A stretch of 64,000 nucleotides of DNA from Stylophora pistillata (taxonomy: Eukaryota). Position numbers and translations under genes: made by a program. The stretch's first letter is position 1, and the number at the start of each line of letters is the position of its first letter. The notes under the pieces are model-generated. The model did not search any database. It saw only the letters and a program-made list of their open reading frames with translations, and was not told where the DNA came from. Positions 1,151-56,500 of this stretch are shown here, in pieces. The stretch is from assembly GCF_002571385.2 (NCBI RefSeq), contig NW_019217786.1, positions 989,676 through 1,053,675 of the forward strand. The letters are read 5' to 3'.

Positions 1151-1162
1151 CNNNNNNNNNNN

Positions 1163-1478
1163 CTATATCTTATTAACCAAGCGCGAGGGCCGTACTGGGA
1201 GAATATCGGCCCGAGGTCTTGACAGTACGGACCGAGCGCAGCGAGGTCCGTACAAAAAAGACCGAGGGCCGATATTCTTCCAGTACGGTCCCGAGCAAGC
1301 TTGGTTAATAAGAGATTTATTATACGACTGAAGTTCAAAGGGACACAAGTGCGGTATCATTCGGGACCATTCGGGACAGTGCCCGGTCCAATACTTAGAG
1401 AATATCGGACCGGCAATAGAGCATTTTGATTGGTTGATTTTAGTTATTGGCCCTCTGACTGCCCGAGTCGTGTAATAA
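1163..1478 (+). mobile_element. Non-autonomous palindromic repeat element: 146-bp hairpin (1168-1313) plus an inverted-repeat-bounded body
   Basis: Arms TCTTATTAACCAAGC...GCTTGGTTAATAAGA. Second inverted pair TTATTATACGACT (1317-1329) / AGTCGTGTAATAA (1466-1478). A matching half copy lies at 26356-26416 on the opposite strand. Confidence 0.8.
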
Positions 1479-3329: not shown

Positions 3330-3436
3330 ATAACTTGGATATATCAACAAAGTTGAAGTGGTAAATTGGCCCGTAACGATTACAAAAGCTGACGTTTCGA
3401 GCGTTAGCCCTTCGTCGGAGCGAAGGCTCTCTCTCC

Positions 3437-3468
<32 letters not shown>

Positions 3469-3584
3469 TGTAATCGTTACGGTGGCCAATTTACCACTTC
3501 AACTTTGTTGATATATCCAAGTTATTTCGTTACTCCCACCGACGCAGCCCCAAACAGTTTCTTTCGAAACTATCAGCCTTTATT
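3330..3584. mobile_element. Penelope-like pseudo-LTR insertion in inverted (palindromic) arrangement with 13-bp target site duplication
   Basis: Near-perfect palindrome 3330-3525 made of the same sequence that follows the GIY-YIG ORF at about 35520. CTTTTGCCTCAAT is duplicated at 3317-3329 and 3585-3597. Confidence 0.85.
3388..3423 (-). ncRNA. Minimal type I hammerhead ribozyme-like motif (Penelope-associated, U4C variant)
   Basis: Reverse strand reads GCT-CCGACGA-A-GGGC TAAC GCTC-GAAA-CG-TC-AGC. The opposite arm (3433-3465, +) has GAAA changed to AAAA. Confidence 0.6.
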
Positions 3585-4173: not shown

Positions 4174-4547
4174 TGATTCACCATACAAAACAACTGTCGG
4201 CTACACAAACAGATTGTATGGGCTCCCTCTGGTTAAACAGTAATCTTTCCCGGAAAAGTCCGCAGGTACAATCAACAGAAAGAAGAAGTGAAGGAAAAGA
4301 AGAAAGGTTGAAAGAGGGTTAATCGAGGATAAATGGCTCTGAAATTAGTTCACTCCCTCGTGTACACCCCTCTTCGCCTTGCAGATGGTCACAGCTTGTC
4401 ACAGCTGGCTTACAACCGACGTGACGCAATTTATTCCAGGATTAAATTTCTATCTAAATAAGACCTTGCTTGCGAGAGCTCCACTTTTCGCAGTTTCCGT
4501 TGCTACACAGTCAAAGTAAACGTTCAGGTTGTTCCATCAGCGCAGTA

Positions 4548-6900
4548 ATGGGGGAACGAAACACGGCCAACGAAATCTTGGCCACAATATTCACAAGTTT
4601 GTCCCTTTTTGGTACGCTTTTCATCATCGTCTCTTTCTTTCTTTGGAAGGATATTCGAACTACGTCAAGAAGAATTCTGGTTTACATTTCTATCGCAGAC
4701 TTTCTCACGTGTGTTGCAACAATTGCTGCTACGACAAACATTTGGTTATCAGGAACTGAAAATAAACATGTCTGTTTTGTCCAAAGTATCATTGGAACTT
4801 TTTCTGTGCTGACTTCTTTCTTTTGGACAGTTTCAATGGCGTTGTATCTGTACATCTCTGTTTGCTGGAAGAATTCTCGACTAGCTGAGCGTTCACTGTA
4901 CTTATTTCATGTTTGTGGCTGGGGAATTCCAGCAGTATTTGTCGGTGTAGCAGCGTCAACTCATAAACTGGGAGATAACGGCAACAAAGTCTCTGCAGGA
5001 TGGTGTTGGATCAGCATTAAATTGAGCTGGCTTGAACAAGTCGAGTGGATGCTTTTGGCTGGAAAATTGTGGGAAATAATGGCATTTTGTGCAATAGTTG
5101 TACTTTATGCCTTAGTCAAGCGAAACATGAAGAAGGAGGTAAGATTATTACGCTTTTTCTCGCTATGAACTCAAGCTATTTAACCAGGAAACTCCCAAGA
5201 TCCGATTGTAAATTCTCTCCTCTAGCTACTACACATTTCCTTATGAATTACACACAAGAATATGGTGTTAGATCAAGATAAAAACTTCTACCATTTTGGG
5301 TATTCTCATTACATTTTCGCTGGATAATGTATAGACCACTTTCATAAATGGCTGCCGTATAAATATTCTTTTGTTTAAATTTAAATTAGCCCTTCTGGCC
5401 TCGCTTGAGATAATGTATTCTTTTGAATTTTGTACTGGAGAACGAGGCCAGTAGGGCTAATTTAAATTTAAAGAAAAGAATATTAATCCGGCAGCCATCT
5501 ATGAAAGTGGTCTATGGATGTTATGGCAATAGGTTACATGTTAATCACTTCTGATAGTTCTGAGGTTCCAGTTAAACCATAATATTTTTGATATTGGTGC
5601 TTGTGTTGTGTCCCCAATCTTTCTTCAGCACTGAGGCCTCATTTGGTTGATAGCATAGAAACATTAGGAAGGGAACTATGTCATACAAATACTAAGATTA
5701 GTTGTTTTTGTATGGCTTGTGGTCAGTATGTTGGAGGAGTGTGTGCTTCTCAAGTCCCATTAGAGACAAAAAACTTGGAAACATGGTCAAAAATTAGGGT
5801 GCATATTAAACATGTGGGGCAGGGGGGTGTTATCATACAGTAACTATATCTTTAAAACTGTGCAAGTTGTGTGGATCCACGGCAGGAAAACATTATTATG
5901 AAATGAATGGTAGTATGATATTTATATATTTGAATATATATTTAGCCTTCAAACTTTAAGAATACTTCAATTTAAAACAACAAATGCATTGTTTGTTTCC
6001 TTAGCTTCATGAGAAAAACAGAGTTCTAACTGAAAGTACAGTGGTGCAAGCTCAGAAGGCAGAAAGGAAACTGATTTGTGTTCCCTTATTATTTGTGTTC
6101 CTGCGTGTTTGGGGAACTATAAGATTTCTCCTGATGATTGTGTGTGCTAAGAATCCAGATTATGAGTCGCCAGTTTGGCTGCTTATTCTACAGGTTAGCA
6201 AAACTGGTTTTATTAATTAGTAAATAATTTTAAAGTACCCAAGTTAGGGGTTCTCCTCAAGGACCCGTACTTGACAAGTTTCTTTTAGGTCTTCCAAAAC
6301 AATTTCTTACAATGAACACCGCCTGCAAATAGCGAGCTAATCTAGGGGGGCACTGACATTATCTTGCAAATCTAGGTAGGTACTGACATTATCTTGCAAG
6401 ACTTTCCACATTAGACAGTGACATTGCTTAGATTTCCAGACATACTTTCAAAATGCAGCAATATAATTTACATACTGAATTATTGTTCAAAGAAGTTGCT
6501 AAAAAAACAAATTGTGAATATTGCAATCGTGGCATGGATATTTCATATTGGTATGAGGTGTTTACCTTACATGTAAGTGATTTGATATGCTCACTTTATT
6601 GTATTGTTTATTTTGCAGGGTATTGGAGATAATGCCCCTGGATTTGCAAACTTTCTTCTATTTTGCTTTTTTACTGAAAAATGTCTTGGGAAGTTTCGTC
6701 GCTGTTTTCAAAGTTGTACAATGTGTTTTGACTCAAGATCTCCCATTGGATTGAACTGCTCCAACTCACTGCAGGCAAGTTATAGTTGTGATGTGACAAT
6801 TGGACAACCAATCATCAATCAACATTCCATGAATAAAGAAACTGATTGTTTGAAGGGGCATCATAATACTTCTGTTGATTATTCATCAATGAATTGCTGA
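4548..6900 (+). CDS. GPR157: GPR157-like G protein-coupled receptor (cAMP-receptor-like group), about 353 aa; exons 4548-5138, 6005-6193, 6619-6900
   Basis: Seven hydrophobic segments. Motifs RRILVYISIAD, CFVQ, SFFWT, GWGIP, SAGWCWI, LAGKLWEI, ERKL..VP..F..LRVWGTIRF and LQGIGD. GT-AG phase-0 introns keep the frame. The ORF-track start at 4470 is a TTG; the ATG is at 4548. Confidence 0.9.
5331..5515. mobile_element. MITE with long TIRs, nested in an older repeat (about 5180-5575) in GPR157 intron 1
   Basis: ATAGACCACTTTCATAAATGGCTGCCG mirrors CGGCAGCCATCTATGAAAGTGGTCTAT. Inner arms TTTAAATTTAAATTAGCCCT / AGGGCTAATTTAAATTTAAA. Confidence 0.85.
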
Positions 6901-19700: not shown

Positions 19701-22700
19701 TTTCCGTACAACCAAGACTCGCTCTTGTTTGAATTGTAGCCATATGACCAACCTACCGCCCAATTTTTGAGAATTTTTCTTAAAAGATTTGAGTTGTTTT
19801 AAAGAAGCAGGGCTGATTTTAACTTTATAAAAAAAAACATTAATCCGTCAGTCTTATAGCTGTTAATCTTTGTAGTGTAAATATTTACTTTTCTTTTGAG
19901 ATCAAGTTGCGAAAATGACCTTTACTTACTGCTCCAAATTTGATAACGATAGACAAGAAGCACTTTTGGAGCAATTAGCTTTTGAGCGCGGAAAGTAAAC
20001 TGAGGTTTTGTTGGTATTGTTTTTTGTGTGGCCCTGTGATAAGCTTAACCACTCAGATGCTGAACTAAAATCAATTGCGACCACACTCACGTTTCTCCCC
20101 TCTTCAGGTCGTGTGCATGTGATTTCGTCGAGTTTTTGTTGGCTCCTTGTAGTATTTTTCTTTTTTCCTGATAGGCCTGTAAAACGGATTTAGGTTGCGC
20201 ATGCAGGTAACGCCAGTATTATTCACGTATTAAAGTAAATCTCATAACGGATATTTATTACATTCATTTTGAAAACACTGGTGGTCCCTGTAATCTGATT
20301 GGCTCTAACTGGTGCGATTTATTCACGAATCGCACCATTTTTTGCTCTAAATCGCATCATTTTACGCTTGACTGAGTTTGGGACACATGACGTCAAAGTC
20401 TTTCTGTTTTGCATGCAAAATAAGATGTAGAAGCATTTCCGGTTCCGCTTTTTATTGAAAAAACCGGCTCAGTACTGCATCAGTAAATATTTAAATTGAC
20501 CAAGTCCTGTATTTGGGCGATTTCAAAATGGATGTAATAAAGTGGTAATTGAACGTCGTGTCATGCAATTTTGGTCATAAATCATACTTGTGATTTTAAA
20601 ATCACGCGTATGATTTCAGCCCAAATTGCACTCCACTCAGTTCAACTACACTTTCGCCTATTCTTTGCAAGTCCCTTGAATTTGGACATTTCTACCGTAA
20701 ATTTACAACAGCAACCGAAGGAATTCGATGAATAAAAGTCGCATGAAATCTCCTTGTGTCTAGCTGGAAAGAGTCTTATTGACTTTAACTTTTCGGGGAA
20801 AGAAAAACCGATTTACACACGCCATTACAGCTGACAACTCCAAAGCATACATTTGCGTTCACTTTCAATTTTACTTTCCGTGACATTTTAAAACGAAACA
20901 GAGGTAAATTTTCGTACATTGATCGTCGTTGAAAATAAACAATACTTTTCGTAAGATCTCCGAGTGTTTTTCAGTTTTACGAGAAGATCGTCAGTTAACT
21001 CGTGTGTGTTTGTCTTACAAGTTCTGTTGTTTATTAAAACGTGTACGCTTCTTTCCTCTTCAATTGACAGGTGTCACATCATGACAGTTACTAATCAAAA
21101 AATGTTTCAAGTTTGCTCGGAAGCCTTTTAAGTTGGGTTAAAGGGAACCTCCATTATTTTTACAAATATCGGCTAAAATGTTTCAATTGTACTTATTAGA
21201 AGATCTGAAATAAAAAAAGGGTCTCACCTAGTGAAATTAATTTTTTATCGTCCTTCAAAGATGAAAGCTTTCTCCTTAGTTTGGATAACGTCTGTTTTCT
21301 TTATTATCCACTCGCTAACAAATTATTAAGTTTATGGAGGATTTTCCCGTATTTAAACTCGTAATTGTAGCCGCAAATCACATGGGTTCTTATGGCAACC
21401 ATTTTCTATGTGTTAGAAAAAAATAGAAAATATTATTGACCAGCATAGGTCGGTCCGTATTGGGAAAAACTGTGGCCTCGGGCGGTATCCAAGACCTCGG
21501 GCACAGTTTTTCCCAATATGTACCTCCGGCTGGTCAATGAGATATTTATGCTTTATGCAGTCATCATACATATGCAAGCGTCAGGGGATGAAGCACTTCA
21601 TACATTTGCCATATTTTTTTGTAACCCTCTGACCACTTGTAACCGTTTAGAATTATCTATTCTTTGAGAGGAATCGACTCAATTCTCATGAACGATGCTC
21701 GGCGTTTTTACAAAGGTCTATGCTTTCCCTCTCTCTGCTCTCATAAATCTGTTCTCTCGCACAACATAGTAACAGTACTAAGATCCACTAAACGTTAATG
21801 ATAATGATTACCATCATTGTGGTAATGTGAACGAAGAGACATCTCTATTGAGTAACATTTTAACAACATGAACATGATTGCACAGTTTAAGACAACCTTA
21901 TATTTTCTTCATTTCGTTATGACGTTAGGTCATTACGTCCAACCGTGAACCAGATTTGACAAGCCTTTTTTTACCCCTGGTAACCTGACTTTTTTTAAAA
22001 TGTGCAATTCCATCTTTCTCGACAGAAAAGTCTGTGCGAACTGCAAATGTCCCCGTGAGAACCATGATCTGTCTGTAGATGTTGATGCTGATGTCGACGT
22101 GGACGAAGTTCAATTCAAAGTAAAAGGCCTTAAAATCAACTCGGACACGAACCGCGAAGATGATTTACCATCCCCTCCCCCGCTGTCAAATAACAATGAA
22201 TACCCAACGATGAGGGTTTTTACTACTCAATCCTCCCCTGTGGATAATGACTTCTTTCCCCCTCCGCCCCCTCCCTCAACGGCCTCAGATTACCTTTGGT
22301 CACCTCCAGGGTTGACAACTGGTCAGGTATGGAAAAACAAATATGTCATTTTCTTTCCGCATCAGAGCCTATTTTAGTCTTACGAAAATTTTTGTGTCTT
22401 CATTAATTTTCTGCATTTTTGGGGGGGATAATCTTGCCACAATTTTTTCATTAAAAGCATCAAAAAAGTTTTCCTTGTTTGAAAAATGCCTTAGCGCTGC
22501 GGTTTAATGGATAAATCGCCATTTAGGAAATGAATATTGGCAAACCGCACCATGCTTTCCGTCGAATAAGATTAATTCCGATGAATAACTTGAAAGTTAT
22601 CTTTGTGGATTAATAGTAAACAGAACCAATAGATTTGCGAACAGAACTTGAAAGACATCTTCATGCTTTAGACCAGGAAGGTTGAAGTATATGTCCTCAC

Positions 22701-25700
22701 ACAACGAAGAAATTTTTGAACTGAGACTGCACCTTATCCAGAAATTTTTATGCATAGTTGTGCTCTTGTCTGGATCATGATAGGTGGAGGCTTACATGAA
22801 GTCCCTACCAGAGGATAGAATTCCCATCGCTGGTACACCAGGAGAAGATTATTACATAAAACAGCGCGTATATCAAAACCCACCACAAGACAAAGCACCC
22901 GTGCATTTCTCAAATATTCCCGAGCCTCAAAGAGAAGCTTTTGTTCAATTCTGGAATAACGAAGACAATGCAAGAGGAACCGGAAAGGTCAAAGTTCCAC
23001 TTGGAAGAAGAGAGGTCAGAGAAACTCCTTGTCCTCCTTATTATATTGTTGATTTTTTCTCCTTGCAAGTAGAAGAAACAAGAAATACGTTCATGTCCAG
23101 CAGAGAAAAAAAAGAGAGACAGTTGATTGCATGCGCATTTCTTTCATCTCTCAACGTTAATGCTAAATATGTCAATTTACAACGTTTGACCCCCCTTAAA
23201 GACCTTAATCCTCAAACCAGACACAATGCTGGACTAAGGTTTTTCAATAACACACATACACACGCCCTGAATAGATACGTGGTCAAGTGAAGCCACAGAA
23301 CGTCAATACTGGCAGCAGTTCTCCACACTCAGAATGGCTTGTATTAATAAACTGTTTGGAATGCACTTAAATTATGAAAAAAAAAAAAAAATTACGGAAA
23401 GGCACCAGAGACGATAAAGAGTTTCTCTGGCGATTTTCGCCGAAAACTAGACGTAAGTTCGCTCTCCTGGATAAGAATGGAAGATTAACATGTTTGTGAT
23501 GAAAAAAACGAAAACAAAAACGATAAGATTTTAGAGTCACTTTGCTATAAAGCCTTTATTTTAGTGACTGATGGAACACTTCTTTCTCAGAACAGTGGAT
23601 TGCATCATAAAAAAATGGGCTTATCTGTGTATCTGCTCTCAGTATTCCTTTATTTCAAGCATTAATGAGCTTGGCGTGTTTTTTTTCTAATGAAGCATTA
23701 ACTTTTACTCGAAGCTTTGTAAGCGCACACATGCCAAGAAATGTTCATACTTCCTAGCCCTTTAACCCCAGGCAACAAAAGTTTCATAAGCTGGCTGGAT
23801 AATCTGCTGAGGTCTTAATCCTGCTTAAACAATAACTTGTCCAATCCGCTTTAAATTAAACGCTGTGAAATTTAACGTACAAGAAATGATTAGCTTTAGA
23901 TCAGCCTAGATAAGAACAAAACTGATAATGGTTTACCAAAACCATTTAGGTATGCTTTATGATATAAAGAGAATTCCAAGAACGAGACTGTAGATGTTTA
24001 CGGTAATCTTTCTTGAGTTCTTAAAGATAACTCTTGAAAAGGCGTGTATGAACACGTTAAGTTTGCAGGGATAACTTTTCAACGAGAGGAATTTGTCTTG
24101 TCTTGTCTTGTACCAAAGAGGCTCTGACTAGTTAGAGTTTAAGTAAATGTCCATTTGTGTTAACCCTGTTTAATTTGGTTGTTAATGATGTGCTTCAAGT
24201 ATGTGAACAGATGCGCATAATTCCTTACAGATCTTTAATCTTTCTTATAATTTTGGGCAGTCTATCCTTTCTGCGTATAATTATCATTATTATTTTCATT
24301 TTACGTATAGGAGCTCTTTAAGCTACTTCTCTATCATTGTTCACGCGCACAAAGATGTCTATATATTTTCCGGCTCAGCCTAATCTCTCTTAGTGGTTTT
24401 CTCGTGGGAGTGCGCTAAGTCCTCGCGAGTGCGAGGACTTAGCGAGGTGGCCGCTTGTTGCGCGGGGGTCGCGAGAACCACGCCTTGGATATCATAATTT
24501 ATTCTTACCACTCCATGGTATTGTAATTTCTCTTATTGTGTGGTTTAAGTCTTAACCTCGTCTCACATTTTACGATAGGTCACTTCCTCCAATAATTTCG
24601 TACAAAAAAAAGAATTGTCCAATAGTTGTGAAAAAATAGGTCTTGAGCGGTAGGACGCGGAATTTTGATTCGGCCAAGTGACACATCAATGCATGGTATT
24701 GTTTTTCATGATCAAACGCTACCGAGGTGTAAAAGATGAAGTTATTTGATTAAATTACTATGCAATATTCATGTTCGTTCCTGGTTCGTTACTTCACAAA
24801 GACCCCTGGTACAGAGTAAAATCTGTAGTAGGCGATCTAGTAAGCCCCCAGACCCTCTGGATATCTTATTTCACAGGGCGTTCGGGCTAACGCTCTTTAT
24901 AATAATAATAATAATAATAATTTACATTTCTAAAGCGCTAAAATTATAAAATATTCTAAAGCGCTTTACAACATTATTAACTACAAATATTAAAATGATA
25001 AACGACAAAATATCAAAACAAACTGTAAGCCAGCTTGAATAGATGTGTCTTAAGCTTTGACTTAAAAATCGTTACACTTGGACTGTTTCGAATTTCAAGC
25101 GGCAGTTCGTTCCACAAAAAAGGTCCAGAACGGGCAAAGGCACGATCACCAAAGGTCTTAAAGTTAGTTCTTGGGACCTTAAGGAGACCCTGATCGCAGG
25201 AACGTAGCTGATGACCCTTGACACTGTGTGGCTGCAGATATTCTTTTATGTATAGTGGGCCTTGGTTATTTAAAGCTTTATAAATTAAAAGTAACAACTT
25301 AAAATGGACGCGATAAGCCACAGGAAGCCAGTGAAGATTATATAAGGCGGACGAGATGTGGTGAAACTTGGGAATCCTAAAAATTAGTCGAGCAGCGGCG
25401 TTAAGCACCTTCTGAAGACGCTCTGTCTGGTACTTGGGTACGCCAAATAAAAGGGAGTTGCAATAGTCTAAATGCGAAGTCACAAATGCGTGAACAAGAG
25501 TCTTCGTGGACTCAGGACTGAGGAATTTCCTAATTTGGCGAATTTTATACAATCCATGAAAAGCTTTGCTGCAGATCTTACCAATGTGAATGGACATGGA
25601 CATATTGGAGTCAAACCAGGAACCCAGGTTTCGAACACTGTTGAGAGGCTGAATGGTAGAATTACCGACTGTGATGGAATCAATTGCGATTTTTGATAAT

Positions 25701-27406
25701 TGATGGCGGGAACCAACAACTAAGAATTCGGTTTTAGAATCGTTAATTAACAGGCGATTATAAATCAACCATGAGCGGACATCCGAAATGCAGGCTTCAA
25801 GAGCAGCTATGGCGTGGTCTTGCGAAGATATGTCATTGGGTCTAAACGACAGATAAAGTTGTGTATCATCGGCATATCCGTGAGCAGAGGGGAGATGGTT
25901 AGCGATCACGTGATATAGTCGAGATATGTATAATATGAATAAAATAGGACCCATACAGCTGCCTTGTGGGACACCGCAGTTCAAATGAAAATCATCTGAT
26001 GTTCGATCGTTTATGAGAACACGTTGTTTTCGGCCAGACAGATAAGACGCAAACCATTTATGGGCAGAGCCAATGATTCCAAAATCGCTTTCAAGAACAT
26101 TAAGGAGAATCTGATGATCGATTGTATCAAAAGCAGCGCTTAGATCCAGTAGCACAAGAAGCGTAATTTCCTGATGGTCCATTGACATAAGAATATCACT
26201 TTGAACCTTAAGCAAGGCAGTTTCGGTAGAGTGAAATCTTCTAAACCCTGATTGTAACTTCGGCAGAGGAGCATTGTATTCACAGTGCTTAAACAATTGA
26301 GAAAGAACCGCCTTTTCGACGATCTTGGAGATGAATGTTAGATTGCTTACCGGTNACTGTCAAGACCTCGGGCCGATATTCTCCCAGTACGGCCCTCGCG
26401 CTTGGTTAATAAGATACATGAAGCGCTAAAGAACGACAGGAGGGTTGCAAATAACATAAAGTTAAAGAGAAAAATTGAAAAGGAAATTCCCACCGTTTGC
26501 ATAAAGTGTAAGTAACAAGAGAGCCAGCAATGCTCCAGGTATTGAGGTCGACATCTGAAAAAAAGCGGTAACAAGTACCTGTAGCTTCAAATTATCTGCA
26601 AATGTTTTTAGGATCATTCATTGACAGCCTGAACAACAATTTACGAACTATTTTAAAAAAGAACCGAAGCTTTTCAATGTTGTTCATAGGTTCCCTTTTT
26701 GTGGATCATTTGATGTGGATACTTAATTTCCTGAAAATGATATGCTTGGCAGTCTAGTCAAAAAGAATATTTTGGCAAAAAAAGTCATCGTTGATTCATA
26801 ATCAGAAATTCTCAACAGAACTACAGTAAAAATAATGAGTAAAAGCCTTTTTTTTTAGAAGTCCCAAGGGTCAGAATGTTAAAAACTTTTCCAATTCCGA
26901 GTCCACGTAACAATCTCCAATACCGCATTTATGTATTAGTGACGTCGTCGTTATTTTGAAATGGTTTCTCGTGAGGAATATCGCCTTTAAGGGGACAGTC
27001 GTCCCTGATCAGAAATATTTGTTCATTAGGACTACTTCTCTCAGAACCCAGCCATACCTGGTGTAGTAACTTTTGTTTAAGGACAACTTTCCTGTCTCCC
27101 ACGTATTGCAACTGATGTAATCACCCTGTGTTAAGATAATCTTGTCAATGCCTTGTCCGACTCTTGTAAAACGGTTTCTTCTGTTGTGCGCGAAATTCAG
27201 ATAAATTATTTAACGGACATGTCACTGATAAAATGCACCTGCCAATAAAAAACTGAATTAGTTATGATGAAATTTGAAAGATAAAGAAATGTGTTAAAAA
27301 TTCTTGGGTTTGGCAGACATGAACGCTGTTTTTACTAGAAGTGCATGCTCTGTTCCTCTTAAAAAATATGACTAAGTACTGAAACTGGCCTATTCGAAGT
27401 TGATTA

Positions 27407-28792: not shown

Positions 28793-30370
28793 GCCACCGA
28801 CAACAGTCCTTCTCAGGACTACACTAACCCGGACGATCACACGGCACTTTCACATCTGTAGCACGTTAGCTGTGATTAATAGGTTTGGATTAATGTCAGT
28901 ATCTCAGCAATTGCGCACCTACCCCTCCCCTAATCAAACATGAATCGTAAATTGTTATCAGTTGACTGCTGTTGGGGAAGGGGTGGGGGCGTAGTGCTGT
29001 TTTTGGGGAAGGGGTGGAGGCGTAGTAGCTCAGATTCTTTCTTTGATCCAAAGCTTTTTGGGGCTTTGATCGAGTCAGTAGAGCTGGTCCTCTTTGCGAG
29101 GCCCGGATGTTCAAAGTCTAGGCTTCACGATAAAGTTAATTTTTTTTCATTTCAGTTTGTTACGCGACATTGACACATAATTAATTTTGAACTTTTTTTA
29201 TTTCCCTCTATCTGCGCATGCTCAGCTTATCTTTACTGGAGAATACACCATAGCCATGAACAAAAGCTGGCACTTGGGTCATTTCCGATGCAACGAGTGC
29301 GACGTCAGTATCACAGGCAAGCAGTTTATTGTCAGAGACGAAAAGCCCGTATGCGTTGACTGTTTTGACTGCAGGTGTGTTCTTTTTGCTAAGAATTACG
29401 TGACTGTGCGTTGTACGTGATATATTAATTTCATGGACGCTGTTATCTTATTCAGGGAGTCAAATGACAAGGAAAATCGTGAAGAACATTGAGAGATTTT
29501 TTCGCCAATTCTGCGTCTGAGACCAACTTTTTTCTCAATAGCAAGAGGGCAACTCAACAGCAGTCTTGCTACTACTGCTTAAGATTCTCCATTCTGTATC
29601 GATTAAGCGGTTTTAATGGTCAAAATTGTTTCTTTTAATGCAGATTTGCTAACGTGTGTGACTACTGTCATGGCAAGATTGGCCCTGATGCTAAAGACGT
29701 GTCAACGGCTGACGATCGACATTGGCACGAAATGTGTTTCCTGTGCGAGTTGTGTCGGAAACCTCTGCGATCAGACGGAAAATTTACTTTCTACAAGGAG
29801 CAAGTTCTGTGTAATGATTGCTACATCACGAACTTCCAGAAGACGTGTGAAGGATGCCATTATGCCATCGAGTCTGGAAGCGCGCGCTTGGAATATAATG
29901 GCACCTACTGGCACGAAGAATGCTTCAAGTGCGCCGTCTGTCGGGAAGCCATCGGGACCAGCGGTTTCGTTCCAAAAGATGACGAGTTCTATTGTCCAGG
30001 ATGCTACCAGAATTTGCATGCCAAGCGTTGCGCGGATTGCGGGGAGCCACTTTCCGAAGGCGGTGTCCTTTACAACGAACAGACCTGGCATAAGGAATGT
30101 TTCAGTTGTTTTACCTGCCATGAATCGTTGGCATCTCGACCATTCTCCGTGCACAGTGGCCACCGCTACTGCATCGAGTGTTATGGAAGGTTCCTGGCCA
30201 AGCAGTGTGAGGTCTGCTTTAAACCAATTATTGGCGGTGAATACTTCACGTTAGAGGAATCAAATTTCCACAAAGAGTGCTTTAACTGCACTCGGTGTCA
30301 GCGGTCTCTGGCCAATGAGGGATTCGTCAGGGAGGGGGTTGAACTTCTATGCGCCAGTTGTGCTGATTGA
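16778..30370 (+). CDS. Testin/LIMPETin-like protein (Cys-rich + PET + six LIM domains), about 581-595 aa; exons 16778 or 16820-16852, 16981-17066, 22026-22326, 22784-23014, 28285-28503, 29226-29374, 29644-30370
   Basis: Testin-type Cys-rich region GKPCLKCGEKCSGFSLHVWR|KVCANCKCPRENH. PET motifs YLWSPPGL..GQ|VEAYMKSLPEDRIP..GT.GE...QNPPQD. Six LIM domains starting CQSC, CYGC, CDYC, CEGC, CADC and CEVC. All junctions are GT-AG and in frame. The first exon is the least certain. Confidence 0.9.
20255..20649. mobile_element. Palindrome-ended non-autonomous element (inverted-repeat-bounded body plus about 105-bp hairpin)
   Basis: TTATTACATTCATTTTGAAA (20255) / TTTCAAAATGGATGTAATAA (20521-20540), then an imperfect hairpin GTAATTGAAC...TGCAATTT...AAATCATAC..GTGATTTTAAAATCAC..GTATGATTT...AAATTGCA...GTTCAACTAC. 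Confidence 0.7.
21435..21538. repeat. Degenerate palindromic element related to 1168-1313
   Basis: ATTGACCAGC...ATTGGGAAAAACTGTG / CACAGTTTTTCCCAAT...GCTGGTCAAT. Shares CAAGACCTCGGGC with the copy at 26356. Confidence 0.7.
24899..26354 (-). mobile_element. Young L2-clade LINE: uninterrupted RT and C-terminal ORF2 region, cut by an assembly N at 26355
   Basis: ORF 25013-26296 has QSGFR..HSTETAL, LLDLSAAFDTIDH, GVPQGS and YADDTQLY and continues upstream to PVSNLTFISK. 3' TGTAAAGCGCTTT motif and (ATT)n tail at about 24899-24921. Confidence 0.95.
26356..26416 (-). repeat. Half copy of the 1168-1313 palindromic element
   Basis: Reverse complement of about 1166-1226; truncated at the N. Confidence 0.85.
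27407..28027 (-). mobile_element. 5'-truncated copy of the same L2 LINE
   Basis: Sequence and translation (ORF 27531-28001) match 24899-25509 with no difference seen by eye. Longer (ATT)n tail. Confidence 0.95.
28725..28850 (+). mobile_element. Penelope-type pseudo-LTR relic of a second family, with a decayed hammerhead motif
   Basis: GACT-CTAACGA-TGAC...GTC-GAAA-CATC-AGTC at about 28750-28790 has hammerhead topology, with CTGANGA changed to CTAACGA. Confidence 0.55.
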
Positions 30371-47500: not shown

Positions 47501-50500
47501 TTGGCCCTTTATTTTGTGCTAAATATATTTTATTAGACGTTTTGTTGTGTAGTATCGCTGAGTATTTTTACGACAANNNNNNNNNNNNNNNNNAAAAATG
47601 GTAAACACCACTCGTACCTACAATTTCCCATTTCAAAAACGAGTGGAGCCACTCGTTTTTGAAATGAGGAATTCAACTCTTCGCTTGCTCGATGCGAGAA
47701 AATCTGTTTAACGGGTACTCTAGAGTACAAATACCGCGTGATATTTGTACTCGTCTATGGCGTTATTTGTACTCCACGAAGTGTAGTTGGATAATAATGA
47801 TCACTATTCGTTCCTTACGAGTGAAAACTGCGTGAACTTAAAACTGGAAACAAAATGGCCGGCGTAAGCTCGCGTTATTCGCTAGCCTAGTTATTTAGAA
47901 GATATTTTTCCGATAGGGAAAGCTTAAGAAATCTTCAAAACCTTTTCATAAGGTTGTTCAGTTTTCATCTTGATTATCCTTAATGTACGAAACTTAAAAT
48001 TTTTAAACTTCCTTACAGGAACAATTTACCGAAATACGAATGATTCGTTCTGTAGCCTTGTTTGCCTGACAAGACTAATTCCTTACCGGAATAAAGCTTT
48101 TCATGGCACTACGAAAATATCACAAAATCTTAAAATAATGCAACACTTTCCTTACTCAGAGTCGCTTTTGATGGGCACCTTTGAACGACGCCACAAGATA
48201 AAAAGCCCTCAGTCTTCCGCACTCCTTTCACTTAACACTTTGTGAAAATTTTGCCGTCAAAAGTTGTGAATCTCCACATCTCACCGTTACTGGTGGAAAA
48301 TTAATCGAATTCCAACAACAATTGTCCAAAGTTCGATGTCCACCGTAGTGTCCTCGGGGCCTCCCATGACCACTGATTTTTATCAATAAACTGTAACTTC
48401 AAATGTTAGCCCAATTCTTTTCTCAAGCAGACCATTGATTTCTGTTTTGGATGAGTCTCTTGTGAATGACTCCTTCAAAATCTCTTGAGGAAACATTATA
48501 CAAACTGTTACCATTTTGATTGCGCGCAAAATGTTTACCTTATTTTATGGAATAATAAAAATATCACTGAGAAAATATAGGAAAGCATCACACCTGCCAT
48601 GGCGTGTGATCAGCGCGCGCTCCTGCAAGAATGGCGGCTTTCTCTTTAAGGCCAAACCTCGCCATAGAGGAAAGTCATCAATTTATCGACAATAAGTTTT
48701 GTGACCTATCATTATTTTTCTTAGCTTAGCAATAGTTACATTTAAACGGAGCACTTCTCAGTTCAAAATGAGAAACAATCGGTGTANGCTTTTGTAATCG
48801 TTACGGTGGCCAATTTCCCATTTCAACTTTGTTGATATATCCAAATTATTGTCCAACTTCATTTATTTCCAGAGAAAGATGCACATTCAATACACTCTTC
48901 ACTATCAATGCTTCGATTTTTCAATGCTTTCGACTCTTACGCTTCTTTTGTGCTTAGCAACCTCTCGCGTGCATCCATAACTCAATAGTGTACGCTGTGG
49001 TGTTTACCATTTGTTAATTCCAAAACATTGTGTTGTTGTTATCTTGCGTCAGGCTTCACATACAGTTGATGGATCTCCAACAAAAGCAAATCAATTCGTT
49101 GGGTGACTGGCTGGCTGTGGCCGAAAAGCGAATCGAGAGTTCGGAAAACATTGGCTCTGATCTGGACACCGTGAAACGCCAGGTGGAAAACCACAAGGTA
49201 CAAGATTCACTTTCTGTTAAATTGCTACGGTTCATTTTTTATTTGTAGTATTACAATACATAATATGAATGTCTGTACAGCGCTTATTATATTCATGGGA
49301 TCTTAAGTATAAGAAATGAGTTTCTGTCATTTTGCAAAATCTTAGCCTATAAGTGTTCCCTCATTATCAGCGGTACGGCACAAGCATTTGTTCTTCCGTG
49401 AGAAAGTTTGAGGCCCTGACCGATGCGAGCTGTCGAGAGTTCTGCAAAGGGTTTGGTTATATCTCGTAATAATTTTTCCCCGACCCAAGCGTTCTTCTGG
49501 GTGATAGCCTATATATTCTGCATCAATAGATAGTTGCTGTCATGAATCCCTCCTTCTCTTTCCTTCGTAATCGCGCAGAATTGGCATAATTCGAAAGGGT
49601 ACTAGTGACGCGGCTCCAAACAGGAAAAACATGTTGATGACTCGTCAATTTACATTTTTCAGCATACACAAGGCAAGCATTTTTAAGTTCGACGCTCCGC
49701 TCCGTAAACTCGTCAAAGATTCGGAATCTTAGCACTCGTAATCAATATTGTATGAATTGAAATTAGTTTTGCCCGTATATGGCAAACCGTTCCCCCAGCT
49801 ACGAAGGCTATTGACTGACATTCCATTTGTTGGTTTTAACCTTGTTGGGTCACAGAGTTTTTCCAGGAAGACCTCGAGAAGCAGCAGGTGCAGGTGAACT
49901 CACTGACGCACATGGTTGTTGTAGTTGATGAGAGCTCCAATGAGAGTGCTACCGCCGACCTGGAGGAACAGTTGGCGGTTCTTGGGGAGCGCTGGTCAAA
50001 CGTTTGCAAGTGGACAGAGCAGAGGTGATAAAATCTTAATTAAGATTCTGTGTGTTGATCTTTGGTAATATCTTCTCTCCGCTCGCTCGAAGTCTCTCGT
50101 CCCGGATTCGCTATGCTGAAGTTTTCTCATCCATTTGTATCTGTAAGGAAAGCGATCCTGTAAATGTACCCAAGTAAAACGATGGACTATCCTAAATGGA
50201 GCTATACACGCATCAAGTCCCTTGTGGCTTATCAACAGATGATCTCTGCGGTTAGCTTGTCACGCAGTCTCTTACATCTTATCCCCGATTTTTGAAGGAT
50301 TGTTTGCGTGACGCGCCAAACGAAATTGTCTTGTCCAATCAATGTGACGTTTGCAGTCATTCGATAGTCTGAAGATCTAAGTATCAATACTCTTCCGTCA
50401 CTGTCTGCCACACGTTTCTTTTATATGTAAACCTAGCTCTGAGAATGTGGCTTTAAAGCAGACAAAATCTCCCAGTCGATAAATTTTTTTTCTACTCGTC

Positions 50501-53500: not shown

Positions 53501-56500
53501 TGATTAATTTATGTCTTTAGAGAAGTGTCATTTAATGTGTGGCTAGCGTCAGAGGTTTGCAATGAGTTCAGCAGAAAGCCACTCAACTCCCTGAGCGCAG
53601 GGCTGAAAATGTTTTCTGCGAATTTAAGATATGTTAGCTGCAAAACGAGGGACGAGTGCACGAGGTCGGGTGTTATGGATATGAAGAAAAGGAAGAAAAA
53701 TCATAGAAAAGCTTTACAAAGCACTTAAACTACGGGCCAGTATTTCTACCTTGTAACAAGACATATCTCACGCTATGAATTGCAAGGGAGCCTCAACAAA
53801 GTTATTTATCTTCCTAAAGATTCGTATCCCATGTTGTCGTTTGTAACAACTAATGTAGTTGTTTTTCTACAGCCTGCAATGTTCTTTGGGCTGAAAGCTT
53901 CGTTGGTAAGAAGTATTAATTTTTCTCTTCAACAGCAATTGCAAGCAAACATGGTTGAACAGCAAGGGAACATGGACTATCTCAACAGCACTGGAGACAA
54001 GTTTGTGAAGTCTCTTCCCCGACAGCGATCAGAACAGCTTAGGATGAAGCTTGCAGACTTAAATGATAAATGGAGAGACATCAATCTTCATGCTGAGAAG
54101 CGACAAAACCAGGTAAGAAAGCCCTTTTACTCCGAACTTCGTGTAAAAGATTCTAGAAAGTTTCCTTTTTATTATTGATTTTAGTTTCAGAAAACGCTTC
54201 TGACGAGCTGTCATTAGTTGACAGGTATTATGAAGGAAAATTATAATGTTTTCCTCCGATTTTGCCAGAAATACGAAAGTCTTTGGATGGTGTTAAGGGA
54301 AAGTTCCTGGTTGTTGTAACAAAGTTTCTTTGTCAGGTTGGAAAGGCCGTCAACCAAACTCGACAATTTACGGAAGAGATCCGAGGATTGTTTAAATGGC
54401 TGACGGACGCCAATGATTTCCTCAAGGATCAGGAATCTGCTGCTGGTGACCCGGAAACATTGGAGGCTCAGCTGGACCAGAGCGAGGTCAGTTCACTTAG
54501 CTTTGGAGACAAATTTTTCCTTACCTTCACTCTTACTTAGTTCTCAAGAAAAATACTTGAACTTTATTCGTTAATGATGTGGATAACCAGATCATCACAG
54601 AAAGCTTCTCTTTGTCTCAATGTTTCTGTTACCCCAATATTGTTTCACAGGCCTTGCAAGGCGATGTGACTAAACTTCAGCGCAAATTGGACTCTTTGAA
54701 TGAAACTGGAACATACATGATAAGCAAAGCTTCACCAGCGTATGCCGATAAACTCAAAAATGAATTGGATGAACTAAACGGGCGCTGGGACGAGCTGGTG
54801 CGTGTGTCGCTCAGGGTGAAGGATAACTTAGTGGCAGCTTTGGAGAAATATCAAAAGTTGACTCACGACATGAAGGAGATCAGCCATTGGATCATGCAGG
54901 TGGAGAGGTCTATTGTTGATGATGAGGGGGAGATCACGAGTGGTGGAATCTCCAAGGAGAAGATGGACCATTATAAGGTAGGAATACGTGTCCAAGAAGA
55001 ACTGGATGCCTGGGTGAGGGATCATGTTACTCGATTTTTATGTATTAAAGAAAACGTTTTATCTCCTGAACGGGAATATATTCGTTACATTTCTTTTTCA
55101 AAATTGGTTATTCTATGTGTGATTTGGTTTTATCAACTGAGTTGATAATGTAAACTGGCCACTGTAAATAGTTTCAAAACTGACGTTCCGAGCGTTAGCT
55201 CTTCGTCATTCGCTCCGACGAAGGGCTAACGCTCGAAACGTCAGCTTTGAAACCCTGTACGGTAGCCAATTTACATTACCTGTTACCCCTACCGACGCAG
55301 CACCACAGTTATTTTAGCAACTTGCCGCCTTTATTCTATGGGTATATAAGAAGTTTCTTTTTTTGTATCGCAAGTTTATAAAAGAGTCTTCGACTAATTA
55401 ATACCTAAATTTGTGGCACAATACTTTTTTACAGGAACTACAACAAGATATATCGAAGCGTGCGCCAGTAGTTGTTCGAATCAACACGACTGGAAATCAA
55501 TTAGTTGACCGCACAAAACAGGGAAGCCCCGCCCTCCTTAAAGAAAACTTGAAAAAGCTGAATGGCGATTGGAACCGACTGAAGACAAAGGTTGCACAGC
55601 GGCAACACGAGTTCAAGCAGACTCAGTTAGAACTGGAGCAGTTTCATGTGTTGATTGAGCGAGACAAGAAGCTGATCGGTGAACTGGATCGAGTGGTGGA
55701 GAAGAGTTATCATGTGCTCGAAGGAACTGAAACCGAACTTGAAGAAGCTCTGAGGGTAAGCTTCTGAAAGATTCTGAACTAAAAATATGAACTGCAAAGG
55801 AACAGAGGGTCAGTAAACAGGATTCAACTAATACATGTGGTTGACGTATTGGCCCAATGGTCAGCGCAATTGATTCAGGATCGTAAGACCTTGAAGGCCT
55901 TGATTGTGTTGTTTTGTTGGTCCAAACGCTTGATATTATAAAGACTAGCAGTGCTTTCCCTCGCCCGAAGGTTGTTAATTCGGAACAAACTGTCGGAGAA
56001 ACCTGCCCCAGGGCTGGGCGATCAATTATGGTTTTGACTAACATCCCACCAGGGGTAGTGACAATACTCAAGGGAGTCCTGACAGTAGTCCTAGTCGCTT
56101 CATGCCACAGAATCCTTGATAAGCTCCGGAGGTGACGGGTGATTGAAATGTTGCCAATGTTAGTTGTCTTATGTCTTTTATAAGCCACTTGTAAGTCGTG
56201 ATGTCCTAAACGATTTTGCCGACATAACGATATTTAGATTTAGATTTAGATATATAACTTTTCAGTGTACCTCTGTTTTTCTCTTTTTAGAATCTAAATC
56301 GTCATTTTGCGGCCATCAAGGAAAGCGGTCCAGGCTCAGTATCAGAACTCGCCAGGCAGCTGACGAGTAAAAGAATCGCTGTAAATGTGATCAGAAAAAA
56401 TATGGACGAGTATGAGGTGAGATAAGTACTTATTACTTTGTAAAAGCGACTCTTGGTTCTTGACCAAGGATCAGGTTTCCGTACATCCTTCTATTCTCTG

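What the first reader, a model, noticed from the sequence alone, without database searches (positions are those of the whole stretch)
1168..1313. Strand-asymmetric DNA hairpin: three tandem GA/AG mismatches plus a GCA triloop
Seen: folding the + strand gives tandem 5'-GA/3'-AG pairs at 1185-86:1293-94, 1213-14:1264-65 and 1234-35:1243-44, each in a C-GA-G context. The apex is GC-GCA-GC (loop 1238-1240). A few ordinary bulges and one small internal loop remain. Established: tandem sheared G.A pairs in Py-GA-Pu context and C(GNA)G triloops are unusually stable in single-stranded DNA, whereas the complementary strand would carry TC/CT mismatches and a TGC loop. Inference: the element may be selected to fold as ssDNA on one strand, like bacterial attC sites, REPs or IS200/IS605 ends. 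That would point to an animal mobile element moved through a folded ssDNA substrate by an HUH nuclease or tyrosine recombinase rather than by ordinary cut-and-paste. No such enzyme is encoded in this window, and I cannot tell whether the family is already catalogued.
Basis: partly seen in the sequence, partly recalled or inferred. Interest (0 to 1): 0.8.

Follow-up and report, generated by a model that had tools for sequence, protein, structure and literature searches.

The report
Hairpin end of coral Crypton transposon
The 146-base hairpin is real: it caps one end of a very abundant, recently active 311-base mobile element of a stony coral. Longer relatives of the element sit next to a tyrosine-recombinase (Crypton-type) gene. 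Its G-A mismatches and GNA loop stay on one strand even in unrelated families, which hints, without proving, that the enzyme reads folded single-stranded DNA.

Summary
Window 1168-1313 folds into one long hairpin with three C-GA-G/C-GA-G tandem mismatches and a C-GCA-G apex.

It is not a stand-alone palindrome. It is the fixed left end of a 311-bp non-coding element (1168-1478). An exact 30-mer of the left end (TA flank plus arm) occurs 746 times in this 398-Mb coral genome, and at least 40 copies are identical over the whole hairpin. The element inserts just 3' of (A)TATA, has no target-site duplication, and has unlike ends.

The asymmetry belongs to the family, not to single copies:
- The purine-mismatch arm adjoins the TATA flank 746:6 in this family and 166:12 in a second family of unrelated sequence.
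- Stems covary between subfamilies while the GA dinucleotides stay.
- Five other palindromic repeat families in the same DNA lack the feature.

Longer relatives with the same hairpin/inverted-repeat junction continue into an internal region. At four loci that region abuts a tyrosine-recombinase gene (DUF3504/Phage_integrase) on the opposite strand.

Best reading: a non-autonomous Crypton-type element whose hairpin is the recombination end. Use of folded ssDNA is inferred only. I tested the Helitron2/Helentron reading and found no support. Earlier follow-ups of this scan reported the same hairpin class elsewhere in this genome.

The parts
1163..1167 (+). Conserved left flank CTATA (ATATA in most copies). 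It is the preferred target or crossover sequence, and the element starts right after its last A. An N run (1152-1162) lies just upstream and was left untouched.
   Evidence: TATA precedes TC in all 30 readable copies, and ATATA in 28. Further out the flanks are unrelated. In the second family the same position varies (ATATA, ACATA, AAATA, GTATA ...), as a target would.
1168..1313 (+). 146-nt terminal hairpin, the left end of the element. Its termini are TC-TTATTA ... TAATAA-GA.
   Evidence: At least 40 copies are 100% identical. 11 of 60 pairs show compensatory change between subfamilies, against 3.9 +/- 1.5 in shuffles.
1185..1186 (+). GA of tandem mismatch 1 (partner 1293-1294), in C-GA-G context
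   Evidence: The 3' GA is kept in 8 of 8 aligned subfamily members and the 5' GA in 7 of 8.
1213..1214 (+). GA of tandem mismatch 2 (partner 1264-1265), in C-GA-G context
   Evidence: It is kept in the 77%-identical L058 family while the flanking pairs changed on both sides.
1234..1235 (+). GA of tandem mismatch 3 (partner 1243-1244), next to the apex
   Evidence: In the L058 family the closing pair changed from G:C to A:T while GA/GA stayed.
1238..1240 (+). GCA triloop closed by C1237:G1241
   Evidence: GNA loops on the same strand occur in unrelated families (GTA, GAA).
1314..1316 (+). 3-nt spacer GAT between the hairpin and the proximal inverted repeat. In the joined (circular) form it lies opposite the joint.
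   Evidence: fold of distal end + hairpin + proximal end.
1317..1329 (+). Proximal 13-bp subterminal inverted repeat, TTATTATACGACT
   Evidence: Read directly. It is complementary in 12 of 13 positions to 1466-1478. The same layout is found in the L058, L013, L004_684 and GACG families.
1330..1465 (+). Non-coding body. It holds a small second hairpin (about 1380-1415) and two CCAAT boxes when read on the - strand (1427-1433 and 1446-1450).
   Evidence: It has no ORF, no tRNA and no Rfam match. It is a deletion derivative of a roughly 520-bp form seen in coral metagenome contigs.
1466..1478 (+). Distal inverted repeat AGTCGTGTAATAA, the right end of the element. The flank beyond it is unrelated between copies.
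   Evidence: copies are 310-312 bp long and the alignment collapses after TAATAA.
26355..26416 (-). Second, truncated copy of the same family: TA flank plus the first 60 nt or so of the left arm. It is broken at a single N and followed by reverse-transcriptase coding sequence.
   Evidence: (C3:1016062-1016091).

Best explanation
Window 1168-1478 is one copy of a young, very abundant non-autonomous derivative of a Crypton-type (tyrosine-recombinase) transposon of a stony coral. The 146-nt hairpin is its recombination end. Read on the strand that carries the recombinase gene in the long relatives (the window's - strand), the layout is: distal inverted repeat TTATTAC with CCAAT boxes, then the body (recombinase gene in the long forms), then the proximal inverted repeat, then the long hairpin, then TATAT. 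If the two ends are joined as in a circular intermediate, the two 13-bp repeats pair and lengthen the hairpin stem. The joint then sits inside that stem, opposite a 3-nt bulge. Proposed mechanism (inferred, not shown): the recombinase recognises this folded end on the strand that carries the tandem G.A pairs and the GNA loop, which is the bottom strand relative to its own gene. It cleaves at the foot of the hairpin (A|TC) and exchanges one strand with a target cut 3' of (A)TATA, and replication resolves the junction. That would explain orientation-specific insertion without a target-site duplication, much as integron attC sites recombine. Shown here: the anatomy, the copy number, the fixed polarity, the covariation with retained GA/GNA, and the physical link of the hairpin family to a tyrosine-recombinase gene. 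Inferred: the circular intermediate, the use of single-stranded DNA, and which strand is used.
For: (1) The hairpin is one end of a 311-bp unit. Copies share 1168-1478 and diverge outside it, with TATA always on the left, nothing conserved on the right and no duplication.
(2) Copy number and youth: at least 40 copies are 100% identical over 146 nt, there are 1642 first-look candidates, and the left-end 30-mer has 746 exact matches.
(3) Polarity is fixed. TA flank + purine-type arm occurs 746 times against 6 for TA flank + complement of the other arm. In the sequence-unrelated 'GACG' family the counts are 166 against 12, and 9 of those 12 are solo hairpins.
(4) The feature recurs. C-GA-G/C-GA-G mismatches and GNA loops on one strand occur in at least five hairpin families (ours, L058_653, L067_9005, GACG, L021_268/L058_352). 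Five other palindromic repeat families in the same DNA have none.
(5) 11 of 60 stem pairs changed on both sides between subfamilies (shuffles 3.9 +/- 1.5, 0 of 500; slid controls 1-4), while the GA dinucleotides were kept in 41 of the 47 aligned site-copies.
(6) Link to the recombinase. Coral metagenome contigs L075 and L073 carry the exact 27-nt hairpin-end/repeat junction of this element, followed by a longer internal region. In this genome the hairpin and that region are contiguous at six loci. The region abuts recombinase hits on the opposite strand at four loci: DUF3504 at C344:294569-295024 (340-aa open frame), C704:82025-82189 and C4789:21-200, and Phage_integrase at C29:674652-674912 (25.9 bits, below the 27.1-bit Pfam cut-off, E 0.0016).
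(7) The joined-end fold lengthens the stem by about 14 bp, and the same pairing can be written for the L058 family.
Against: The distal end of the long form, its length, the catalytic residues and the absence of other ORFs are therefore unverified. The recombinase-linked copies are 79-87% identical to the metagenome contig and look degraded (C704 lacks part of the domain; the C29 hit is below the Pfam cut-off). The enzyme that moved the 100%-identical 311-bp copies is thus not identified. Classical Cryptons are described as having no terminal inverted repeats and as flanked by 4-6 bp direct repeats (PMC3212892); I found inverted repeats and no direct repeat. Simple double-strand tyrosine recombination predicts the crossover sequence at both junctions, yet the right flank is not conserved. 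Both strands fold almost equally well under standard parameters. No empty site was recovered.
Confidence: 0.55

Rival explanations
1. Non-autonomous Helitron2/Helentron (HINE-like) element. A RepHel HUH enzyme nicks at the 5' inverted repeat, unwinds, and uses the oversized 3' hairpin on displaced single-stranded DNA as its stop signal.
For: The layout matches the published one: a 5' repeat at the very terminus starting with T, a 3' repeat just upstream of a terminal hairpin, and no target-site duplication (PMC3627910, PMC4067079, PMC7492417). RepHel genes are present: 42 Helitron_like_N hits, including a Rep+Pif1+APE Helentron on C13.
Against: The intact Helitron (C174/C410) has canonical ends...CTAG|T, and no long hairpin. 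Hairpin elements near Rep genes are nested insertions that split a Helentron ORF. No such hairpin lies downstream of the C13 Helentron, and no TTATTA-type terminus lies upstream of the C85 copy. The target is ATA, not TT or T-rich. The hairpin is 5-10 times longer than any described for Helitrons. The long relatives of this family carry a tyrosine recombinase instead. On the Helraiser model the transferred strand would carry the TC/CT version of the hairpin, not the G.A version.
Confidence: 0.17
2. Ordinary palindromic (fold-back) DDE MITE with a TA duplication, for example Tc1/mariner-type. The 311-bp form would be a chance fusion of the hairpin with a neighbouring MITE, and the GA mismatches would be hitch-hiking features of a successful master copy.
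For: 33 solo hairpins of two families are flanked by TA on both sides (pattern control 0). There is a preference for TA-rich sites. Old copies lose CGAG through CpG decay, so individual copies are not under selection.
Against: Solo hairpins are a small minority: 6 against 746, and 12 against 166. The dominant form has TA only on the left and no duplication. Polarity is fixed. The hairpin + repeat-bounded body layout recurs in at least five families, so it is not a one-off fusion. GA/GNA recur in sequence-unrelated families but not in the other palindromic MITEs.
Confidence: 0.05
3. The hairpin works as RNA. It would be the 3' stem-loop of a retrotransposed unit, either a SINE-like element read on the - strand with a (TA)n tail or a DIRS-like tyrosine-recombinase retroelement whose internal copy of the joined ends templates a circle.
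For: On the - strand the element ends hairpin-TATAT, often followed by (TA)n. The internal TAATAA-GAGAT-TTATTA resembles the joined ends. C-GA-G tandem mismatches are also stable in RNA (own knowledge). A reverse-transcriptase fragment lies in the window.
Against: There is no tRNA/5S/7SL head and no Rfam match. The 30 copies are uniform at 310-312 bp with no 5' truncation and no variable-length duplications. On the strand that would be the RNA the mismatches are U.C/C.U, the unfavourable version. DUF3504 is the Crypton-type domain (PMC3212892). Whether a reverse transcriptase adjoins the recombinase loci was not tested.
Confidence: 0.08
4. CGAG is a directional protein-binding word read in duplex DNA, with six copies all in one orientation, like Rep-binding GAGC repeats or iterons. 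The mismatches in the fold would be a by-product of that.
For: All six CGAG words point the same way on the + strand. The apex reads GAGC-GCAGC-GAG. Both strands fold about equally well.
Against: The words always lie at mirror positions, so that they face each other in the fold. GNA loops co-occur on the same strand in unrelated families. In the L067 family the site is GAG/AGA and in the L021 family C-GA-A/T-GA-G, so purine-purine opposition is kept rather than the word itself.
Confidence: 0.1

Closest known systems
Crypton transposons (tyrosine recombinase only; Goodwin et al. 2003; Kojima and Jurka 2011, PMC3212892). DUF3504 is the Crypton-derived domain.
   Same: Long relatives of this family carry a DUF3504/Phage_integrase-type gene. 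There is no target-site duplication. Cryptons are known from cnidarians. A circular intermediate with a short crossover sequence is the accepted model.
   Different: Published Cryptons are described as having no terminal inverted repeats and short 4-6 bp direct repeats at the ends. Here there are 13-bp subterminal inverted repeats, a terminal hairpin of 110-190 nt with strand-specific GA/GNA features, a one-sided ATA target, and huge non-autonomous families. I found none of this in the papers I could search.
Integron attC sites recombined by IntI
   Same: The enzyme is a tyrosine recombinase. An imperfect palindrome lies at the 3' end of the cassette or gene. Strand choice is set by unpaired bases, and the recombining strand is the bottom strand relative to the gene. 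Insertion is orientation-specific and makes no duplication. Structure is conserved while sequence is not.
   Different: attC sites are 55-140 nt, with extrahelical bases and conserved R/L boxes, not tandem G.A pairs or GNA loops. They are bacterial and their cassettes carry no recombinase gene. Use of single-stranded DNA is demonstrated for attC and only inferred here.
Helitron2 / Helentron and their HINE/DINE-1 derivatives (PMC3627910, PMC4067079, PMC7492417)
   Same: Asymmetric inverted repeats: one at the 5' terminus, the other just upstream of a 3' terminal hairpin. No target-site duplication. High-copy non-coding derivatives.
   Different: Their hairpin stems are 5-20 bp, against a 146-nt hairpin here. 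Their target is TT or T-rich, against ATA here. No RepHel partner was found, and the long relatives carry a tyrosine recombinase.
IS200/IS605 (Y1 HUH transposase acting on folded single strands)
   Same: Insertion 3' of a fixed short target on one side only. No duplication. Unlike ends. Imperfect hairpins recognised on one strand.
   Different: Those elements are bacterial, with hairpins of about 20 nt at both ends. Only one broken Y1_Tnp locus exists in this assembly, on a small contig.

Membership tests
Crypton (tyrosine-recombinase DNA transposon) | The autonomous form encodes a tyrosine recombinase | tested here: met
   The internal region that follows this family's hairpin in L075/L073 abuts DUF3504 hits at C344, C704 and C4789 and a sub-threshold Phage_integrase hit at C29. 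All lie on the opposite strand, 92-260 nt away. The gene sequence itself was not read.
Crypton (tyrosine-recombinase DNA transposon) | No reverse transcriptase, DDE transposase or RepHel in the same unit | not tested
   The DNA of the long copies could not be fetched.
Crypton (tyrosine-recombinase DNA transposon) | No terminal inverted repeats; short (4-6 bp) direct repeats at both termini (PMC3212892) | tested here: not met
   There are 13-bp subterminal inverted repeats plus a terminal hairpin. The left flank ATATA and the right end AATAA are not a direct repeat, and the right flanks are unrelated.
Crypton (tyrosine-recombinase DNA transposon) | Insertion without target-site duplication | tested here: met
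   No duplication in 30 copies. No empty site was recovered, so this rests on flank comparison only.
Helitron2 / Helentron non-autonomous element | 5' repeat 0-4 nt from the terminus; 3' repeat just upstream of a terminal hairpin | tested here: met
   On the - strand, TTATTACACGACT lies at position 0, its partner lies 3 nt before the hairpin, and the element starts with T.
Helitron2 / Helentron non-autonomous element | An autonomous partner that encodes RepHel (with or without APE) and shares the ends | tested here: not met
   None was found among 42 Rep hits and about 200 kb around them. The long relatives carry a tyrosine recombinase.
Helitron2 / Helentron non-autonomous element | Insertion between T and T, or in T-rich sequence; short 3' palindrome | tested here: not met
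   The target is (A)TATA on one side. The hairpin is 146 nt.
TA-targeting DDE MITE (Tc1/mariner type) | Terminal inverted repeats flanked by a TA duplication on both sides | tested here: not met
   The right flank of the 311-bp form is not TA. The TA-TA solo forms are 6 against 746.
attC-like folded single-strand recombination site | Structure conserved while sequence is not, with strand-specific unpaired bases | tested here: met
attC-like folded single-strand recombination site | The recombinase binds and cleaves the folded single strand | not testable with these tools
   This needs biochemistry.

The most novel reading that the evidence does not exclude
A eukaryotic tyrosine recombinase (Crypton lineage) that transposes through a folded single-stranded hairpin. 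The active strand would be marked by sheared tandem G.A pairs and a GNA triloop, and a single-strand exchange 3' of ATA would be resolved by replication. This would be an animal counterpart of integron attC recombination. It would also give Cryptons, whose mechanism has never been shown, defined ends and a defined substrate.
Probability: 0.3. Interest if true: 0.85.

Novelty: new variant of a known kind. Interest (0 to 1): 0.62.

Why it matters
Cryptons are the least understood class of eukaryotic DNA transposons. Their ends are poorly defined and no transposition reaction has been reconstituted.

This work gives a Crypton-linked family with thousands of near-identical copies, exact ends, a one-sided ATA target, and a conserved structural code on one strand (C-GA-G tandem mismatches and a GNA loop). 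That yields a concrete substrate: about 190 nt of joined ends, which can be tested as top strand, bottom strand or duplex against a recombinase that can be cloned from the same genome.

If the folded-strand reading holds, recombination of single-stranded hairpins by tyrosine recombinases is not a bacterial speciality.

There is also a practical point. These elements are very frequent, four in this 64-kb window, and they often adjoin assembly gaps. [quoted passage not shown]

Tried and rejected
- RNA gene: there is no tRNA and no Rfam match at E <= 1 in 1000-1700.
- Canonical Helitron as partner: the two 99.9%-identical copies on C174 and C410 end ...CTAG|T and have no long hairpin.
- Helentron as partner: the two hairpins 0.1-0.8 kb upstream of the C690 Rep frame are insertions that split the ORF. 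No hairpin lies in the 3.4 kb downstream of the C13 APE ORF. Walking upstream of the C85 copy found repeat boundaries but no TTATTA terminus.
- IS200/IS605-type enzyme: there is one frameshifted Y1_Tnp locus, on contig C1546.
- Flip/flop inversion of the hairpin, as in parvovirus telomeres: rejected by 746:6 and 166:12. Rare inverted-apex (C78) and arm-duplicated (C148) solo hairpins do exist.
- Empty sites: none of the 31 flank pairs has an uninterrupted paralogue in the roughly 360 kb in hand. The four DNA runs are kept only as short contigs that break at the repeat. They show the boundaries and the high copy number in four samples, but no empty allele.
- Viral contig scan for the junction 27-mer: 0 hits.
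- ORFs in the window and in the 13 metagenome contigs: no recombinase.
- Proximity of my listed copies to Rep or DUF3504 hits: none within 20 kb.
No sequence that I took for human was met.

Full report
THE OBSERVATION

Window 1168-1313 folds as single-stranded DNA into one long hairpin (-59.4 kcal/mol, z -13.7).
- G,A at 1185-86 opposite 1293-94, at 1213-14 opposite 1264-65, and at 1234-35 opposite 1243-44. Each is closed by C:G and G:C.
- The loop GCA at 1238-40.
- A 4x4 loop (1221-24/1254-57) and two small bulges.

The complementary strand carries TC/CT and TGC instead, yet it folds almost as well under standard parameters (-56.1 kcal/mol, z -12.6). The asymmetry lies in the kind of mismatch, not in the ability to fold.

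WHAT IT BELONGS TO

The genome is a 398-Mb assembly in 5513 contigs. Public runs that hold the locus are labelled as coral.

A search with the 146 nt returned 40 places at 100% identity out of 40 scored, from 1642 candidates. When 30 copies are aligned with their flanks, the hairpin turns out to be the left end of a longer unit:
- To the left, similarity stops after TATA (ATATA in 28 of 30), often preceded by (TA)n or an N run.
- To the right, it continues for 165 nt and stops after ...GAGTCGTGTAATAA.
- Copies are 310-312 bp long.
- The right flanks are unrelated and no target-site duplication is visible.

The body (1317-1478) is bounded by 13-bp inverted repeats (TTATTATACGACT and its near-complement), and the hairpin lies outside the left one. 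The body has no ORF, no tRNA-like head and no Rfam match. Read on the - strand it has two CCAAT boxes near the far end. It also has a small second hairpin at about 1380-1415.

IS THE ASYMMETRY A FAMILY PROPERTY?

Four results say yes.

1. Polarity. The exact 30-mer 'TA flank + TC + left arm through the first CGAG' occurs 746 times. The corresponding 33-mer with the complement of the right arm occurs 6 times, and at least two of those are solo hairpins.

2. A second family. It has an unrelated stem sequence (it starts TC-TTATTAGACG) and the same design: two C-GA-G/C-GA-G sites, a C-GTA-G loop, ATATA on one side and an inverted-repeat-bounded body on the other. Its polarity is the same, 166 against 12, and 9 of the 12 are solo hairpins.

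3. Other hairpins in the DNA I hold.
   - The feature recurs in L058_653 (77% identical to ours), L067_9005 and window 21431-21544 (GAG/AGA plus GA), L021_268 (C-GA-A/T-GA-G with a GAA loop) and L058_352.
   - Five other palindromic repeat families show only scattered single mismatches: window 3330-3525 with 55146-55278, window 5331-5515, window 20539-20654, L006_2244 and L016_2116.

4. Covariation. In an alignment of eight members of three subfamilies, 11 of 60 stem pairs changed on both sides. Shuffles gave 3.9 +/- 1.5 (0 of 500 reached 11) and slid controls gave 1-4. The GA dinucleotides stayed in 41 of the 47 aligned site-copies, and a closing pair next to the apex site changed from G:C to A:T.

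Old copies lose CGAG through CpG decay. Selection therefore acts on the active lineages and not on inserted copies, as expected for a transposon.

WHICH ENZYME?

My first reading was Helitron2/Helentron, because the published layout fits: a 5' repeat at the terminus, a 3' repeat just upstream of a terminal hairpin, and no duplication (PMC3627910, PMC4067079, PMC7492417). The tests did not support it.
- The genome has 42 Helitron_like_N hits.
- The intact element (C174/C410, 99.9% identical) has canonical ...CTAG|T ends.
- A Rep+Pif1+APE Helentron exists on C13, but I found no such hairpin downstream of it and no TTATTA terminus upstream of a related copy.
- The hairpins next to the C690 Rep frame are nested insertions that split the ORF.
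- A Y1 HUH transposase is present only as one broken locus.

Earlier notes of this scan reported the same hairpin class elsewhere in this genome. Their follow-ups were split between Helitron2 and Crypton readings. I took the Crypton claim as a lead and tested it.

The test ran as follows.
- DUF3504, the Crypton-derived tyrosine-recombinase domain (PMC3212892), gives 91 hits, many in open frames of 300-640 aa.
- A scan of metagenome contigs for the exact 27-nt junction of this element (end of hairpin + spacer + proximal repeat) returned 13 coral contigs. Most carry a roughly 520-bp form, of which the 311-bp element is a deletion derivative.
- Two contigs (L075, L073) continue instead into a longer internal region. 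That region has 8 places in this genome.
- At six loci the hairpin and this region are contiguous.
- At four loci the region is followed, 92-260 nt further on and on the opposite strand, by recombinase coding sequence:
  - DUF3504 at C344:294569-295024 (340-aa open frame),
  - DUF3504 at C704:82025-82189,
  - DUF3504 at C4789:21-200,
  - a sub-threshold Phage_integrase catalytic-region hit at C29:674652-674912.

With about 190 such hits in 398 Mb, four adjacencies out of eight cannot be chance. The hairpin family is therefore part of a repeat unit that carries a tyrosine-recombinase gene. The gene lies on the strand opposite to the G.A strand, and its 3' end faces the hairpin. This agrees with the CCAAT boxes at the far end.

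The far end of the long form, its single-ORF status and its catalytic residues remain unverified. The linked copies also look degraded, so the enzyme that drives the 100%-identical copies is not identified.

HOW IT MAY WORK (INFERENCE)

If the ends are joined as in a circle, the two 13-bp repeats pair and lengthen the hairpin stem by about 14 bp, with the joint opposite the 3-nt spacer GAT. If ATA is placed at the joint, only one A.G mismatch remains (-75.2 against -71.2 kcal/mol). The same pairing can be written for the L058 family.

Simple double-strand recombination would leave the crossover sequence at both junctions, and it is seen on one side only. Together with the fixed polarity and the strand-specific purine mismatches and GNA loops, this fits a single-strand exchange at the foot of a folded hairpin that is then resolved by replication. 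That is how IntI recombines attC bottom strands.

Sheared tandem G.A pairs in pyrimidine-GA-purine context and C(GNA)G triloops are known to be unusually stable in DNA (own knowledge). I did not measure them, and the standard model gives only a 0-3.3 kcal/mol difference between the strands.

A rival reading is that CGAG is a directional binding word read in duplex DNA. Minor forms exist:
- solo hairpins flanked by TA on both sides (33 places);
- in the GACG family, body-hairpin-inverted body dimers.

These minor forms could arise by recombination between the two TAATAA-spacer-TTATTA sites or by fold-back synthesis. I did not follow them further.

VERDICT

Relative to the literature I could search this is a new variant of a known kind, a Crypton lineage with hairpin ends and massive non-autonomous families. 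The same class had already been noted by this scan on other DNA of this genome.

Noticed in passing
window 21290-21547 (-): A copy of another hairpin-plus-body family, the same as L067:9005-9290. The hairpin has a GAG/AGA triple purine mismatch and the body ends ...GGATAATAAAG.
   Followed up: partly
window 47523-47797 (+): Left arm of the 'GACG' family hairpin after an ATATAT flank. It runs into an N run (47578-47594), and a body end ...GGATAATAA lies at about 47797 with a CAC-GAA-GTG mini-hairpin just before it.
   Followed up: partly
window 20254-20654 (+): An element with the same layout (TTATTAC ... CCAAT-type box ... GTAATAA, then a 116-nt hairpin), but its hairpin has no GA/GA or GNA feature.
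   Followed up: partly
window 3330-3525, 55146-55278, 5331-5515: Long near-perfect palindromic repeats of other families. The first two are related to each other. The third also occurs at L068:8308-8496, inserted in a Helentron copy. They served as negative controls for the GA feature.
   Followed up: partly
window 1152-1162 and loci L004, L010, L017, L020, L021, L023, L024, L028: In 9 of 31 copies an N run begins within 0-10 nt upstream of the ATATA flank. The left junction, perhaps a long (TA)n tract or the hairpin itself, seems to break assemblies. The Ns were not filled.
   Followed up: no
G000:C391:4899-5572, C64:904786-905459, C8:1408145-1408818, C3:2273725-2274398, C85:665860-666533, C339, C78: In the GACG family the body occurs as an inverted pair 179 nt apart around a hairpin (body-hairpin-inverted body). 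These are palindromic dimers, such as fold-back synthesis or recombination at the hairpin would give.
   Followed up: no
G000:C78:469405-469554 and C148:298990-299136: Rare solo hairpins of this family. One has the apex segment inverted relative to the arms. In the other, both arms are the left-arm sequence, which makes it a repaired palindrome.
   Followed up: no
L061/L031 (G000:C174:38500-50263) and L064/L036 (C410): Two 99.9%-identical copies of a canonical Helitron, with an uninterrupted frame of about 2013 aa (Rep + Pif1 helicase) and a second 355-aa ORF that has no Pfam match. The C410 copy has a tandem duplicate of the 3' 1.2 kb. It looks recently active.
   Followed up: partly
L063/L035 (G000:C13:786700-798412): A Helentron: Rep, Pif1 helicase and an Exo_endo_phos (APE) ORF in a row. 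About 15 diverged relatives occur elsewhere.
   Followed up: partly
G000:C1546:14997-15373: The only IS200/IS605-type Y1 transposase match in the assembly. It is split by a frameshift or a TGA and lies on a small contig, so it may be a bacterial contaminant or a transfer.
   Followed up: no
window 4470-5168, 22784-23290, 29654-30370, 25013-26296: Coding pieces in the window: a secretin-family 7TM receptor exon, PET and LIM domain exons (a prickle/testin-like gene), and a reverse-transcriptase fragment on the - strand next to the truncated copy.
   Followed up: no
L079, L082, L072 right flanks (coral metagenome contigs): In the related coral, several copies share sequence beyond TAATAA (ATA..., then GATATTGCCCA). 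Either the element is a few bases longer there or it prefers a repeated target.
   Followed up: no
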